DNA of 56,735 nucleotides from Octopus bimaculoides (Eukaryota). The notes beneath the pieces are model-generated. The model saw nothing but the letters and a program-made list of their open reading frames with translations. It had not been told where the DNA came from and searched no databases. Position numbers and translations under genes: made by a program. The stretch is taken from assembly GCF_001194135.2 (NCBI RefSeq), contig NC_068983.1, positions 146,981,866 through 147,038,600 on the forward strand, given 5' to 3'. This document shows positions 665-56,100 of this stretch, piece by piece (position 1 is the first letter of the stretch; each line of letters begins with the position of its first letter).

Positions 665-775
665 CATCTGTTAGGTTAGTATCGTTTCTTGAATTTATTC
701 TTTCCCATGTTGAGTAGTAAGTTAGGTTGCTATACTGGCATGTGCCTTCTGTGAAACCACAGGAAATATTCCTGG
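665..775 (-). CDS. Exon 15: start of MAM6
   Basis: Pyrimidine-rich ...cattaaag acceptor and gtaagt donor; phase 1/1; RNISCGFTEGTCQYSNLTYYSTWERINSRNDTNLTD (C-x-F-x4-C...W motif). Confidence 0.88.
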
Positions 776-1854
776 CTTTAATGAGAAAGAGAAAAAAAAA
801 TCAACAACATTATTTATTTCATGTCATAAAATATTCTCAAAACTGAAAAAAATAAGTTGTTATTGTATACAACAAATATACAGAAGCATTGAAAACAGAA
901 TGTTTGAAATCAGAGAAGAATGAAGTGAGTGTGATCCTTTTGGTGTGTTATATTAACTTAAGCGAGGAGAATCAGTAAGCTGCCAATCACCTTAACCTGT
1001 CGGATGTTTCCTGTTTGTGAACTCTGTCTTAGTCATACAGATCAAAAATTTGTAATTTGTGTAGTCAACCGTTTGAAATTGGGGACACCCTACTGGATCT
1101 CTATTCACTGAACTGATGGATACTCTATCTAGGTATGACCTGGCTGACCCACTGTGGTTGTTTCATGTAGTCATATTTGGGAAATCCAGCTAGTAGGTGT
1201 TGGACAGGTCTGATCAGGTTTTGATACTTTAGTATCTCTTCTAAAGATTAGCCCTATACAATCTTAGTGAGCATCTAAAACATGGAATTATAACAAACAG
1301 AAGGCAGTTTACAACTTGCTACAATTCATTGATAATTTTATTGATAGAGTCAAGTTCAAGAAATCAAAAGGAAATATTGTTGTAGAATCATATCTGTTGC
1401 CTTCATTTTGTATTTACTTATACAATATTCATAAATTGTTTATAATTACTGGATCATGCAAATCACTACCTTGTTAATAAATGTTTCTCTTTCTTTAATT
1501 GATTATTAAAATGTTGTTGATTTGTTGTTTCATTTATAAGAACCACAAGAAATTATTGACGTTTTGCTTTCAATTTTGATTTTTTGTCATGTATCCTCGA
1601 TCATAAATGTTATATGTTATAAATAGCTGTACTTTTGTGTTCCATTTGTATAAAAGAAACTATATTTAATCAACTACACCTATCAACAACATCAGTAGCC
1701 ATCGGATCAATAGTCAACAAATGTAGTTGTTCACTTTAAATCCCTTATGTCTTATAAGATCTTTCTTTTATTAACAATAATAACACATCTATTTGGCAAC
1801 TTGTCAAGTACATATGGTAGTGGTTAGCTGAATTGTTACAATATTGGACATAAT

Positions 1855-1990
1855 GGTTTGTAGTATTTGTTCTAGCTCTTTATATTCTGAGTTCAAATTC
1901 TACTGAAATCACATTTGCCTTTTATCCCTCTTGGGTAAATAAAATAAAGTACAAGTGAAGTAGTGGGGTTGATGTTTTCAACTAAACTCA
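1855..1990 (+). mobile_element. Degenerate tRNA-derived SINE
   Basis: B-box-like ctgagttcaaattc followed by gccttttatccctcttgggtaaataaaataaagtac; same family as 14315-14467. Confidence 0.55.
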
Positions 1991-3099
1991 CTCTTCAGAA
2001 CTGTTGGGCAAAGAAACATAAGAGTCAGAATAAGAGACATTCGACATGGTGTAGACCTGTGATTAGTAGTAACTTTTGTGTTGCTATATGAGGCTATACA
2101 AAAGGTAACCTGTGGTCAGCGGGGCTATCAAAATGAACTTGCAAATTCTAAAGACCCCTGAACACCACAAAGCCATACTGGGACTGTATCTAGTAAGTAA
2201 AGAGGTGCTGAGACAAAGAACTTGTGACTGATGATGCAGATTAGAAAGCTTAATTGTTACATTTGTCAGAGTTCACAGAAGACCTGGGGAAAATAATAAA
2301 AATCGTCCACAGCATCAGAAAGAGCAACAAGCCCTAGTTTCCTGAATACCACCAGCCAAAGTTTTGGAGATAACAAAAGAAGACTCTTTAGGCCCAGTAT
2401 CACATACAGATGATAAAATGCCTTGTCTCCTAACAATGCCAACTAACAATGTCATCATGCTATTGAAGAAGACATAATTACAAATGAAATTACAAAAGAA
2501 CAAAGGAAAAAAAATCACAAAAACAAAAATACAACATAAAATAATGGAAACAGATGAGTTGGACCAATTTCTTCAAAGCAGTAACAATATCTCTCCTCAG
2601 GATAAAAATGAAGAAAATGCAGGAGTTGAAAATGAACTAAGCATCACTATTCTTTAAAAAAATCAAACTAACAGTTAATAGACAAAATCACACACATCTA
2701 GTGGCAAGGACTCTCTAAAGCAGTCATAATAATACAAACGACATACAAAAGATAGACTACAAGTGTAAATTAAAATTAAGATATTTTGTCAAACTTAGAA
2801 AAAGAACACTTTCAAGATGTTTGTGTATCTCAGTACCAAATATCTCAAAAAAGGGTTTACTGGTGCATCTGGTCATACTAGACTGCAGTTTGAGAAATGG
2901 TTATGTGAATAGGCATGTAGAGTACTCAACTCAACCTAGTCAGGAAATCTTTCATGTCATGTTTCTTTAAACTATATCTCGTTTTAATTACTATATGTTT
3001 TATTGTACATTTAAATTTTTTTCAGTGCAAATACATTGGTGAGCATTCATATATACATGTATATGTATGAACATGCAAGTGCATTAGCTAAAATGTAGT

Positions 3100-3325
3100 T
3101 TTGGTTTCGTGCTGAGGAGGAGCACTACTGATGCTATCTTTATAGTCAGACAACTGTAGGAGAAATATTTGACTAAGAATAAACCATTGTACTTGGTTCT
3201 TGTGAACTTGGAAAAAGCCTTCAAAGAGTACCTCACTGTGTGATATGGTGAGCTCTGAGAAAGCCAGGGGTAGATGAATGGGTTTTGAAAGCTGTACATG
3301 CTATGTACTCTGCACATGGAGTGTT
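3100..3325 (-). mobile_element. RTE-type LINE reverse transcriptase fragment
   Basis: Similar to the RT segments at 22443-22625 and 34142-34390 (YLAFVDLEKAFDRVP-like region). Confidence 0.55.
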
Positions 3326-3487
3326 CTCCATTCTTTAAGATGTCAACTTAATAATTTTTTGTATATAGACTGTAGTCCTAGGCAGCAAGAATGGATCCCC
3401 TGTTTCTACCTTCAGCCCTGAACTTCACAGCCCCACTGCTGAATTTGTGATTGATCTATATCAGCTTCCCTGGTGTAGTGTAGGTGT

Positions 3488-53423: not shown

Positions 53424-53642
53424 CATCATCATCATCGTTTAACGTCCGCTTTCCATGCTAGCATGGGTTGGACGATCTGACTGAGGACTGGTGAAACCGG
53501 ATGGCAACACCAGACTCCAATTTAATTTGGCAGAGTTTCTACAGCTGGATGCCCTTCCTAACGCCAACCACTCAGAGAGTGTAGTGGGTGCTTTTACGTG
53601 TCACCCGCACGAAGGCCAGTCAGGCGGTACTGGCAACGGCCG
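53424..53642 (-). mobile_element. Young RTE-type LINE 3' UTR copy
   Basis: Near-identical to 27690-27875. Confidence 0.88.
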
Positions 53643-54494
53643 AAGCTTTATGTATGTACTCTCAAAGCAATCTTCATAGTCCAGCTTCAGGCTCCATAGA
53701 AAAGAAAGTGCTATACACATGTCTCAACAAAGTCAGTATTTTAAATTTTGAAACACTTGATTGCAAAATGTTTTGAAGTTATAAACATTCCGGGTTTCTC
53801 TTTTGAATAACTGATAAATACCAGCTACTGACCTCCTACCAACATGAAGTCTAAAGACCAAACACCTCACCTCTGGACATATCGTCACCCCCAAATGTTT
53901 AACAAAAAAAAAAGCAACCTTAGTTTCAAATGGAGCACAAAATGTCACTTCATGAACAGAGGAGGGTAGAGTTCTGGATTGGTGTAGAGCTGGGAAGACA
54001 AGAGTGTTATGTGTTCTTATGATGTATCAAATGATTTGGCATGAAGCATTTAAAATTTGGCAGATAATAGATTTATTTTGTGACATTCTTGATAATAAGA
54101 CCATAGGTATTTTTGTGCAGAAATTGAATATAACTTTTCAACTACATTTATCACTATAGGAAGAGAGTGTTGACCGAAGAAATTTTTAGAAAGAAAATTG
54201 TTAAAGGAGATGCACAATGTATGCTGAGGGTAGGGGTGTACATTATAGGACTGGTCAAAGGAGCACTTATTTCAGAGCAGGGGAAGAAGATGCTCATTGA
54301 AGAGATGGGATAGCGGGAGCACACTGTAGGATCAGGAGAAGAAGATACACATTGTAGGATTGGGTGAAAAGGTATATGATATATGACTGGTCTAGGACAT
54401 TGAATATCATGGCTCTAATCCTGATGGGACCTTTTAATTACAGCAATTGCAAGCAGACAAAAAAATATAGATCTTTCAATACTGTATAAACATA

Positions 54495-55924
54495 TAGAGG
54501 TTGGACAAAATAATGGAAACACCTAGCATCATAGCATCATAATTTTGAAATATCTATAACACTGACAAAAGCTTGTTTATTTTTTGTTTTTTGATTTATT
54601 GTTAGTGTTGCTTAATATGTTTTTCTAAAATTGCTGTTTCTTTTCAGATAGCATGAGAAAAAGGTAATTAAAATTCATTAAAATGACAAATCTATTGGAC
54701 TTCTCCTTTGAATACAAGAGGGAACTCGATGTATAGGCTGAGTGAATGTTGGGCTGTGTCACAGGCCAGTTGGGGAGAGACACAATGTAGAAAAGGAAAG
54801 CTGTATCTTTTCAGATATCATCAGAAAAAAGTAATTAAAATTCATTAAAATAACAGATCTATCAGACTTTCAAAGAGGTCAAATTGTTGGTGCTCGTATG
54901 GCAAGTGCTAGCAAAATGAAAACAGCCAAAATGTTTGGTGTATCGAGAAGTGCTGTCTCGAAAGTAATGACAGCCTTTAAGAAAGAAGGAAAGACCTCCT
55001 CGTCAAAACAAAACTCTGGAAGAAAACCAAAACTTTCAAATAGGGACCGTTGGACTCTTACGCAAATTGTTAGAAAAGATCACAAAAGTACAGCTCCCAA
55101 TATTACTGCAGAGCTTAATGACCATCTCAGTTTCCACAAAAATTGTTCACCGGGAGCTTCACAAAGCCAGATTTCATGGGAGGGATTCAATCAGAAAACC
55201 ACTACTTTCAAACCCAAATTTTGCAAAGCGTTTAGAGGGGAGTAAAAACCTACAGAATTGGTCCCTAGAGCAATGGAAGAATGTTATTTTCTCGGACGAG
55301 TCATCCTTTACTTTATTTCTGATCGCCAGCAGAGTATACCTGTGGAGACAGCCAAAAGAAGCATTTGACCCAGACTGCCTTCTTCTAACTGGAGGAGGAT
55401 CTGTGATGATCTGGGCGGGGTAGGAGCTATATCTTGGAAATCCACCAGCCCAATGGTTTCCCTTCATGGTAGAATTAATAGTCAAGACTATTTAAGCATT
55501 TTATCTGATCAAATTCATCCTATGGTTGCAGAACTGTTTCTGGAGGGAAATGCAATCTTTCAGGATGATAATGCATCAATTCACACAGCTAAATTTTTTA
55601 CTGAATGGCACGAGGAACATTCTAGTGAAGTTGAACATCTTATCTGGCCACCACAGTCCCAAGATCTTAATGTTATTGAACATTTATGGTGCATTTTAGA
55701 AAAACAAGTAAGGAGTCGATATCCTCCACCATCATCACTACAAGAACTGGAGACTTTTTCAGCTGAAGAATGGACAAAAATTCCTTTGGAAACAATTCAA
55801 ACTTTGTACAAGTCCATACCTTGTAGAATTCAAGCTGTAATTACTGCCAAAGGTGGTCCTACCCAGTATTAAAATAAATTTGTTTGAAATTTTAAGGTGC
55901 TTCCATTATTTTGTCGAACCCCTG
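54495..55924 (+). mobile_element. Tc1-like DNA transposon with frameshifted transposase (DD36E spacing), 1430 bp
   Basis: 30-bp TIRs (tagaggttggacaaaataatggaaacacct / aggtgcttccattattttgtcgaacccctg) with TA flanks at 54493-94 and 55925-26. ORFs 54898-55245, 55067-55423 (FSDES) and 55453-55872 (QDDNA...DLNVIEHLW). Confidence 0.92.
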
Positions 55925-55970
55925 TATCTATTATTTTATTCTAAGTGTGAAGAAATATTGTATTACTTAC

Positions 55971-56100
55971 TTTTGACCGAAACTCCGACACAGCACTTGA
56001 GATTGAACTGTAAAGTCTCCTGATGTGCAAACCGCTGTCCATTTACCGCTAACATAAACTTTAACTAAGCCATCATAGCCCATGGAGACATCTCCTTGAA
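55971..56100 (-). CDS. Exon 1 of the traced chain: N-terminal half of SRCR domain
   Basis: tcttttcttttttttaaag acceptor and gtaagt donor; phase 1/2; QGDVSMGYDGLVKVYVSGKWTAVCTSGDFTVQSQVLCRSFGQ (GxVxV..GxWxxVC...VxCRxxG motif). Confidence 0.88.

What the first reader, a model, noticed from the sequence alone, without database searches (positions are those of the whole stretch)
665..56100. SRCR followed by an uninterrupted array of at least 6 MAM domains
Seen: a 6-Cys (group A-like) SRCR joined directly to back-to-back MAM domains, with no LDLa, CUB, protease or transmembrane segment in ~930 aa and many N-glycosylation sequons. Known: the familiar multi-MAM proteins are MALRD1 and MAMDC4 (MAM interleaved with LDLa) and MAMDC2 and zonadhesin (MAM arrays without SRCR); SRCR is a pattern-recognition and adhesion module. 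Inference: a lineage-specific secreted or surface protein for microbial recognition, mucus/matrix or gamete adhesion, likely auto-annotated as 'MALRD-like'. Several of its exons are too short to appear in the ORF track.
Basis: partly seen in the sequence, partly recalled or inferred. Interest (0 to 1): 0.7.

Follow-up and report, generated by a model that had tools for sequence, protein, structure and literature searches.

The report
Front half of octopus mosaic protease gene
The SRCR-plus-MAM array is real, but it is only the first half of an octopus gene cut off by assembly gaps; in related cephalopods the same gene runs on through LDL-receptor modules to a trypsin-like protease domain, so the "no LDLa, no protease" architecture comes from the truncation.

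Summary
The window is Octopus bimaculoides chromosome CM046603.1, a stretch bounded by two large assembly gaps. On the minus strand, 15 exons (56100 to 665, all AG/GT) encode one 6-Cys SRCR, five complete MAM domains and the first 38 residues of a sixth. They match NCBI model XP_014790782.2 at 100%. All eight in-window gaps are intronic and hide no exon. Exon 1 (signal peptide) lies about 9 kb upstream, outside the window. The model's stop codon is a read-through of the GT donor at 664-663. An intact, phase-compatible LDLa exon lies 8.5 kb downstream, beyond a 4,087-N gap that most likely hides the rest of MAM6, and an older NCBI model joined it. The O. sinensis orthologue (2,040 aa, 70% identical, collinear) continues MAM6-LDLa-MAM7-LDLa-MAM8-LDLa-SRCR-like-LDLa-LDLa-SRCR-like-trypsin. 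Argonauta, O. vulgaris and a transcript contig show the same plan. The C-terminal cassette is closest to enteropeptidase. This is most likely the non-catalytic stem of a secreted mosaic serine protease of unknown function. The 3' half could not be seen in O. bimaculoides, and no RNA-seq was available.

The parts
55971..56100 (-). Exon 2: first half of the SRCR domain (aa 32-75); phase 1 in, phase 2 out
   Evidence: Exact match to XP_014790782.2; AG/GT boundaries; Pfam SRCR
48904..49061 (-). Exon 3: second half of the SRCR domain (aa 76-128)
   Evidence: Pfam SRCR
47742..47897 (-). MAM1, exon a
   Evidence: MAM1 = aa 129-292
44792..45032 (-). MAM1, exon b
43652..43746 (-). MAM1, exon c
41006..41131 (-). 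MAM2, exon a
   Evidence: junction resolved by eye and then verified by translation
36354..36701 (-). MAM2, exon b
35283..35441 (-). MAM3, exon a
29220..29558 (-). MAM3, exon b (80 nt from the gap at 29028-29140, which is intronic)
23726..23827 (-). MAM4, exon a
18213..18557 (-). MAM4, exon b
13439..13591 (-). MAM5, exon a
11890..12026 (-). MAM5, exon b
10134..10329 (-). MAM5, exon c (unusually diverged from O. vulgaris: 49% aa identity)
665..775 (-). MAM6, exon a only (38 aa). It ends at the phase-1 donor G|GTAAGT at 664-663, which the NCBI model reads through to a stop two codons later
   Evidence: orthologous to O. sinensis MAM6; flanking intron aligns to O. vulgaris at 88-90%
1..664 (-). 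Start of the intron after MAM6a; it runs into the 4,087-N gap that bounds the window. MAM6b is predicted to lie about 500 nt into that gap. The LDLa exon lies outside the window at L001 83686-83796

Best explanation
The window holds exons 2-16 of a roughly 130-kb Octopus bimaculoides gene. These encode the N-terminal, non-catalytic stem of a secreted mosaic (multi-domain) S1 serine protease of about 2,000 aa. The inferred full plan is: signal peptide, SRCR, MAM1-6, LDLa, MAM7, LDLa, MAM8, LDLa, SRCR-like, LDLa, LDLa, SRCR-like, trypsin-like domain. Shown here: the exon structure, the domain identities, the truncation of the annotated model at an unused splice donor, the downstream LDLa exon, and the full architecture in orthologues. 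Inferred: the O. bimaculoides gene still carries an intact protease end. Also inferred: the SRCR-MAM array acts as a targeting or oligomerising arm that places the C-terminal LDLa-SRCR-protease cassette (enteropeptidase/TMPRSS-like) on an extracellular substrate or surface, possibly in mucus. The protease is probably not trypsin-like in either its activation or its specificity, because the family has a conserved non-basic activation site (E-P/S-x|I-K/R-Y/H-G) and Pro at position 189.
For: Exons match XP_014790782.2 at 100%, all AG/GT, with every domain boundary in phase 1. The model's stop is an intron read-through of GATG|GTAAGTAA, and MAM6 is only 38 aa long. The window is bounded by 1,594-N and 4,087-N gaps. 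An LDLa exon lies at L001 83686-83796 on the same strand, phase 1-1, with canonical splice sites, 92% aa identity to O. vulgaris and dN/dS 0.36; its flanks align to the O. vulgaris locus at 88%. The older model XP_014790782.1 (1,094 aa) joins MAM6a to this LDLa and to the start of MAM7. O. sinensis XP_036357547.1 is 70% identical and collinear over residues 1-964, then continues to a trypsin domain; its gene spans 131.6 kb against 65 kb annotated here. In gap-free O. vulgaris DNA, MAM6b lies 1.17 kb after MAM6a, which would fall inside the O. bimaculoides gap, and MAM6b is absent from all sequenced O. bimaculoides DNA available here. Argonauta hians (1,995 aa) and a 6.3-kb transcript-like contig (1,974-aa uninterrupted ORF) have the same plan. 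The C-terminal cassette is closest to enteropeptidase 7wqx (E=3e-42, covering SRCR plus catalytic domain), and the triad is intact in Octopus and Argonauta. Full-length relatives have only an N-terminal hydrophobic segment. Overall dN/dS is 0.58 with all frames open.
Against: The 3' half (MAM6b and everything beyond the start of MAM7) was not seen in O. bimaculoides. No O. bimaculoides protein model in the database carries the matching C-terminal half. RNA-seq was not available for this window, so no splice junction was verified by reads. The current NCBI model and that of the 80%-identical paralogue both end inside the MAM array, so truncated isoforms or truncated gene copies are not excluded. 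A dN/dS of 0.58 is rather relaxed. One relative (P0029) has a catalytically dead protease domain, so catalysis may not be essential to the family's function. The signal-peptide call rests on hydropathy only. The functional role is pure inference.
Confidence: 0.78

Rival explanations
1. The first reader's view, which is also the current NCBI model: a stand-alone secreted SRCR-MAMx5-6 protein with no LDLa or protease, acting as an adhesion or pattern-recognition molecule. It could be either the whole gene product or a truncated isoform made by intronic termination after MAM6a.
For: XP_014790782.2 ends here, and the paralogue XP_052822574.1 likewise ends inside its MAM array. No O. bimaculoides model holds the C-terminal half. 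Proteins under this auto-name occur in octopus skin mucus.
Against: Both model ends are read-throughs of consensus GT donors into the intron. MAM6 would be a 38-aa stump that cannot fold. An orthologous LDLa exon follows on the same strand. No complete relative has this architecture; the only protease-less proteins among those that begin with a single SRCR and a MAM array, apart from amphioxus P0128, are truncated or split models.
Confidence: 0.07
2. A recently duplicated copy that has been truncated or is decaying. After the duplication that produced the 80%-identical pair XP_014790782 and XP_052822574, this copy lost or disrupted its 3' protease half and is either a pseudogene or on the way to a new, shorter product.
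For: The two O. bimaculoides copies are closer to each other (80%) than to the O. sinensis protein (70% and 69%). dN/dS is relaxed at 0.58, and the MAM5c exon is only 49% identical to O. vulgaris. No C-terminal model is annotated.
Against: All 15 window exons and the LDLa exon keep open frames and canonical splice sites. The LDLa and MAM6a exons are under clear constraint (dN/dS 0.25-0.36). The older model found the start of MAM7 further downstream. The assembly here is full of gaps, which by itself explains the missing annotation.
Confidence: 0.12
3. A true orthologue of vertebrate MALRD1 or MAMDC4 (a membrane-anchored protein of alternating MAM and LDLa units), as the automatic name implies.
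For: The automatic name. MAM and LDLa do alternate in the C-terminal third of the orthologues.
Against: MAM1-6 are uninterrupted. The orthologues have an N-terminal SRCR and end in a trypsin domain, with no hydrophobic segment other than the N-terminal one and no EGF hit. The name merely reflects shared domains.
Confidence: 0.02

Closest known systems
Enteropeptidase (TMPRSS15) and the type II transmembrane serine proteases (TMPRSS2, hepsin)
   Same: It is the only well-studied protease that combines MAM, LDLa, SRCR and a trypsin-fold domain. The orthologue's C-terminal LDLa-SRCR-protease cassette is the best PDB match (7wqx, E=3e-42, covering SRCR plus catalytic domain; TMPRSS2 next). The window's MAM region also matches the enteropeptidase heavy chain (E=2.8e-13). 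The catalytic triad is present.
   Different: No type II membrane anchor (a short N-terminal signal-type segment instead), no SEA and no CUB. It has one N-terminal SRCR and eight MAM domains instead of one. The activation site is non-basic where enteropeptidase has K|IVGG, and position 189 is Pro instead of Asp.
MALRD1 / MAMDC4 (source of the automatic name)
   Same: Multiple MAM domains, and LDLa modules between the later ones (MAM6 to MAM8) in the orthologues.
   Different: Six MAM domains in a row with no LDLa between them, an SRCR at the N-terminus, a trypsin domain at the C-terminus, and no membrane anchor or EGF detected.
Uncharacterised lophotrochozoan MAM-LDLa-SRCR-trypsin proteins: the shorter octopus paralogue LOC106867184, Acanthosepion pharaonis 'CORIN' CAE1258642.1, Owenia fusiformis CAH1778746.1
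   Same: The same module set and order, ending LDLa-SRCR-trypsin. The cephalopod members share the non-basic activation motif and the Q-P motif at position 189.
   Different: They are shorter (1,245-1,674 aa) and have fewer MAM domains. The paralogue lies 5.4 Mb away on the same chromosome. None has been studied experimentally.
Invertebrate modular serine proteases of extracellular cascades (Drosophila Nudel, insect MSP/HP14); comparison from general knowledge, not tested here
   Same: Large secreted proteases with LDLa repeats ahead of the catalytic domain. The Pfam family DUF1986, listed as 'Nudel' in the precomputed Pfam annotations, hits the protease region.
   Different: Those have no MAM array or N-terminal SRCR. 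No orthology was tested.

Membership tests
MAM domain (PF00629) | Match to the profile above the gathering score over the full ~160-aa domain | tested here: met
   E=6.4e-98, 5 full-length stretches in the window-encoded protein. The sixth is only a 38-aa fragment with no hit of its own.
SRCR domain, group A type | Profile match, six cysteines, and a domain encoded by more than one exon | tested here: met
   PF00530 at 38-42 bits against a cut-off of 26.1. Six Cys. Two exons, 56100-55971 and 49061-48904.
MALRD1 / MAMDC4 | MAM domains regularly interleaved with LDLa along the protein | tested here: not met
   MAM1-6 are contiguous. LDLa appears only after MAM6, MAM7 and MAM8 in the orthologues.
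MALRD1 / MAMDC4 | C-terminal transmembrane anchor, with no SRCR and no protease domain | tested here: not met
   The orthologues end in a trypsin domain, have SRCR, and show no hydrophobic segment apart from the N-terminus.
Enteropeptidase / type II transmembrane serine proteases | N-terminal cytoplasmic tail plus a signal-anchor helix | tested here: not met
   Only a ~13-residue hydrophobic core after a 14-residue basic N-terminus. Kyte-Doolittle 19-mer below 1.6 in P0001 and P0163. Hydropathy only; no dedicated predictor was run.
Enteropeptidase / type II transmembrane serine proteases | SEA and CUB domains (enteropeptidase heavy chain) | tested here: not met
   No SEA or CUB hit at E<=0.001 in the relatives scanned whole: P0012 and P0029 (full length) and the shorter models P0019 and P0051.
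Enteropeptidase / type II transmembrane serine proteases | LDLa-SRCR-protease cassette at the C-terminus | tested here: met
   Met in the O. sinensis orthologue. Not visible for O. bimaculoides itself, because that sequence lies beyond the window and the gap.
Enteropeptidase / type II transmembrane serine proteases | Basic zymogen activation site (R/K|IVGG) and Asp189 | tested here: not met
   The family motif is E-P/S-(N/S/T)|I-K/R-Y/H-G, and residue 189 is Pro.
Active S1A serine protease | His57, Asp102 and Ser195 present in the gene's own product | not testable with these tools
   The triad is intact in the O. sinensis and Argonauta orthologues and lost in P0029. The O. bimaculoides protease exons were not retrievable.

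The most novel reading that the evidence does not exclude
Octopods have a giant secreted protease in which an N-terminal SRCR plus eight-MAM array serves as a recognition arm. On binding a surface (microbial, mucus or gamete), it would trigger activation at an unusual non-basic site, starting an extracellular cascade at mucosal surfaces in the manner of insect MSP/HP14 or horseshoe-crab factor C. Recent duplication and fast evolution of the MAM array in O. bimaculoides would then reflect diversification of what it recognises.
Probability: 0.1. Interest if true: 0.6.

Novelty: new variant of a known kind. Interest (0 to 1): 0.3.

Why it matters
Mainly as a correction. A domain architecture read from a window bounded by assembly gaps, and from gene models that end by reading through a splice donor, looked like a new protease-less SRCR-MAM adhesion protein. 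It is in fact the stem of a mosaic serine protease. The current O. bimaculoides models XP_014790782.2 and XP_052822574.1 appear to be truncated, the O. vulgaris gene is split into two models, and the 'MALRD1' name is misleading. The protein family itself is unstudied and modestly interesting: secreted, with up to eight MAM domains, an enteropeptidase-like C-terminal cassette, a non-basic activation site, Pro189, and at least one catalytically dead member. It would be a reasonable candidate for work on cephalopod mucosal or extracellular proteolysis.

Tried and rejected
- MAM6b in O. bimaculoides: not found in the window or in L001 (best E=0.5).
- The small ORF at window 131-373 (minus strand), which is in frame with the donor at 664-663: considered as a possible next exon and rejected. 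It has no similarity to MAM6b and runs into a microsatellite.
- An O. bimaculoides model for the C-terminal half: none found. The P0007 tail had no word-sharing candidate, and the O. sinensis C-half found only the 57%-identical paralogue.
P0007 and P0019 are not on record.
- The idea that exons diverge faster than introns (positive selection): rejected. Collinear intron segments are 75-88% identical, which agrees with dS of about 0.26.
- Literature: no paper on this gene, its identifiers or its architecture in cephalopods. Only generic mentions of the auto-name in octopus mucus proteomes and one single-peptide identification of the orthologue.
- Sequence after the 4,087-N gap up to the LDLa exon: only retrotransposon-like ORFs.
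Full report
**Identity of the window.** The window is 36% G+C and has eight N-runs. The minus-strand ORFs contain SRCR and MAM fragments. [quoted passage not shown] Its residues 33-965 match the window exactly. The gene lies on chromosome CM046603.1 at about 146.97-147.06 Mb. In that record the window is precisely the stretch between a 1,594-N gap and a 4,087-N gap.

**Checking the observation.** Fifteen minus-strand exons run from 56100 to 665. 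All have AG acceptors and GT donors, and spliced together they translate exactly to residues 32-963 of the model.
- They encode one SRCR domain (PF00530, 38-42 bits against a cut-off of 26.1). It has six cysteines and is split over two exons, as in group A SRCRs.
- They encode five complete MAM domains (PF00629, E=6.4e-98).
- They encode only the first 38 residues of a sixth MAM.
- There are 15 N-glycosylation sequons, and no LDLa, CUB, protease or hydrophobic segment in the window-encoded part.
- Every domain boundary is a phase-1 intron.
- The signal-peptide exon is not in the window. It lies about 9 kb upstream, beyond the 1,594-N gap.

**The gaps.** All eight N-runs fall in introns, 80 to 2,385 nt from the nearest exon edge. 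If a gap hid a coding exon, relatives would carry extra residues at that junction. None of four relatives does. These are the paralogue P0002, O. sinensis P0163, Argonauta P0012 and the intron-free contig product P0029. Several gaps abut microsatellites: (ATC)n on both sides of 31943-32644, and (TA)n and (TG)n elsewhere. The 10-N gap at 15770 is flanked by a perfect 184-nt duplication, which is an unmerged overlap. The in-window gaps therefore do not affect the coding reading.

**The annotated 3' end is an artefact.** The model ends '...TDGK-stop'. The DNA there reads GAT G|GTAAGTAA, a consensus donor in phase 1 that the model reads through to a stop two codons later. That leaves MAM6 as a 38-residue stump. 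The paralogue's model (P0002) ends in the same way, after MAM4. Only 664 nt of intron follow before the window ends at the 4,087-N gap.

**What lies beyond.**
- An older version of the same model (XP_014790782.1, P0007, 1,094 aa) continues with an LDLa module and the start of another MAM.
- That LDLa exon is present at 100% identity at L001 83686-83796. It is on the gene's strand, 3.7 kb past the gap, with a ttccag|AG acceptor and an A|gtaagt donor, both in phase 1.
- It is 92% identical in protein to the O. vulgaris exon (dN/dS 0.36), and its flanks align to the O. vulgaris locus at 88%.
- In gap-free O. vulgaris DNA (L004), MAM6a, MAM6b and LDLa lie at 28432, 29721 and 34159.
- The O. bimaculoides intron after MAM6a aligns up to O. 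vulgaris 29021. MAM6b is therefore expected about 500 nt inside the gap, and it is indeed absent from all sequenced O. bimaculoides DNA available here.

**The full architecture in relatives.** An exhaustive HMMER search and cluster look-ups found several collinear proteins.
- O. sinensis XP_036357547.1 (P0163, 2,040 aa) is 70% identical to P0001 and collinear over residues 1-964.
- Argonauta hians GAB1606841.1 (P0012, 1,995 aa) is 43% identical.
- P0029 is a 1,974-aa uninterrupted ORF on a 6,328-nt contig from run SRR27666071. Given that the octopus genes have about 30 introns, this contig must derive from RNA.
- In O. vulgaris the gene is split into two adjacent same-strand models, 360 nt apart.

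Domain mapping of the O. sinensis protein gives: SRCR, MAM1-6, LDLa, a divergent MAM7 (no Pfam hit), LDLa, MAM8, LDLa, SRCR-like, LDLa, LDLa, SRCR-like, trypsin domain. Its gene spans 131.6 kb, twice the 65 kb annotated in O. bimaculoides.

Among 171 collected sequences, every complete protein in this group that begins SRCR-MAMn also ends in a trypsin domain. Among proteins that begin with a single SRCR and a MAM array, the protease-less ones are the truncated or split octopus models and an amphioxus protein, P0128. A shorter paralogue (LOC106867184: SRCR, four MAM, LDLa, trypsin) lies 5.4 Mb away on the same chromosome. Similar MAM-LDLa-SRCR-trypsin proteins occur in cuttlefish and in the annelid Owenia.

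**The protease end.**
- The SRCR-like plus catalytic region of the orthologue is closest to human enteropeptidase (7wqx, E=3e-42, covering both domains), followed by TMPRSS2 and hepsin.
- His57, Asp102 and Ser195 are conserved in Octopus, Argonauta, Sepia and Owenia.
- The activation site is a conserved non-basic E-P/S-(N/S/T)|I-K/R-Y/H-G, and residue 189 is Pro. Activation by a trypsin-like enzyme and trypsin-like specificity are therefore both unlikely (inference).
- P0029 has lost both His57 and Ser195, so the architecture can persist with a dead protease domain.
- Full-length relatives have only an N-terminal hydrophobic stretch, too short for a membrane helix in the Octopus proteins. This points to secretion rather than a type II anchor (hydropathy only).

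**Is the window's gene alive?** All exons are open. dN/dS against O. vulgaris over 458 codons is 0.58: fast, but constrained. Collinear introns are 75-88% identical, in line with dS of about 0.26. The two O. bimaculoides copies (80% identical) are closer to each other than to O. sinensis, which suggests a recent duplication. No O. bimaculoides model carries the matching C-terminal half. I could not obtain DNA further downstream, and RNA-seq was not available. A truncated or decaying copy, or a short isoform, therefore stays open as a minority possibility.

**Function.** No paper describes this gene or its architecture. Octopus skin-mucus proteomes list proteins under the same auto-name. The orthologue's UniProt entry A0A7E6ES13 appears in one such table, but with one unique peptide, one PSM and 1% coverage, which is only a weak hint of secretion into mucus. 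By analogy with enteropeptidase and other mosaic proteases (general knowledge), the SRCR-MAM array most likely targets or oligomerises the enzyme. The window's MAM domains resemble those of MDGA1, an insect SR-C-like receptor, the enteropeptidase heavy chain and neuropilin.

**Verdict.** The sequence feature is real and the coordinates are accurate. The interesting part of the claim, a MAM array without LDLa or protease, comes from the window and the gene model both being cut off at an assembly gap. What is there is the stem of an uncharacterised, secreted, enteropeptidase-like mosaic protease. It is a variant of a known kind, already present in public databases under a misleading automatic name.

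Noticed in passing
window 15586-15963: The 10-N gap at 15770-15779 is flanked by a perfect 184-nt direct duplication (15586-15769 = 15780-15963). This looks like an unmerged contig overlap, so the true sequence probably has one copy and no gap. It is intronic.
   Followed up: yes
window 31791-32891; 19676-19710; 19863-19885: Gaps sit in or next to microsatellites: (ATC)n on both sides of the 702-N gap, (TA)n to the right of 18874-19675, and (TG)n to the right of 19853-19862. A long (TG)n run at about 49095-49300 lies just upstream of the SRCR-b acceptor.
   Followed up: partly
window 45424-45996(+), 50746-51348(-), 51907-52215(-), 33867-34154(-), 17442-17861(-), 54898-55872(+): The introns are packed with transposon remnants: LINE-type reverse transcriptase and endonuclease fragments, a mariner-type transposase fragment and a Tc1-like DDE_3 transposase. 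None is intact.
   Followed up: partly
window 10134-10329 (exon MAM5c): This exon is only 49% identical in protein to O. vulgaris (dS 0.57) and does not align at the nucleotide level at E<1e-20, while neighbouring exons are 77-92% identical. Possible exon-level gene conversion from a paralogue, or local rapid evolution.
   Followed up: partly
L002 (contig of run SRR27666071), product P0029: A full-length relative with the same domain plan has a dead protease domain: His57 is replaced (LTHPKC) and Ser195 is replaced (VDDGGP). The species is unknown.
   Followed up: partly
orthologues P0163, P0012, P0161, P0168, P0176 (outside the window): The cephalopod members share a non-basic zymogen activation motif, E-P/S-(N/S/T)|I-K/R-Y/H-G, and Pro at position 189. 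The short paralogues also have Val in place of Gly193.
   Followed up: partly
L004 9641-10001 (O. vulgaris OX597816.1): The O. vulgaris annotation splits this gene into two adjacent same-strand models, CAI9719524.1 (735 aa) and CAI9719525.1 (1,205 aa), 360 nt apart. The O. bimaculoides paralogue XP_052822574.1 also ends by intron read-through, after MAM4.
   Followed up: yes
window 131-373 (-): An 80-aa ORF is in frame with the dangling phase-1 donor and has a loosely MAM-like start, but it runs into a CA/CAT low-complexity tract and has no similarity to MAM6b. Judged to be chance.
   Followed up: yes
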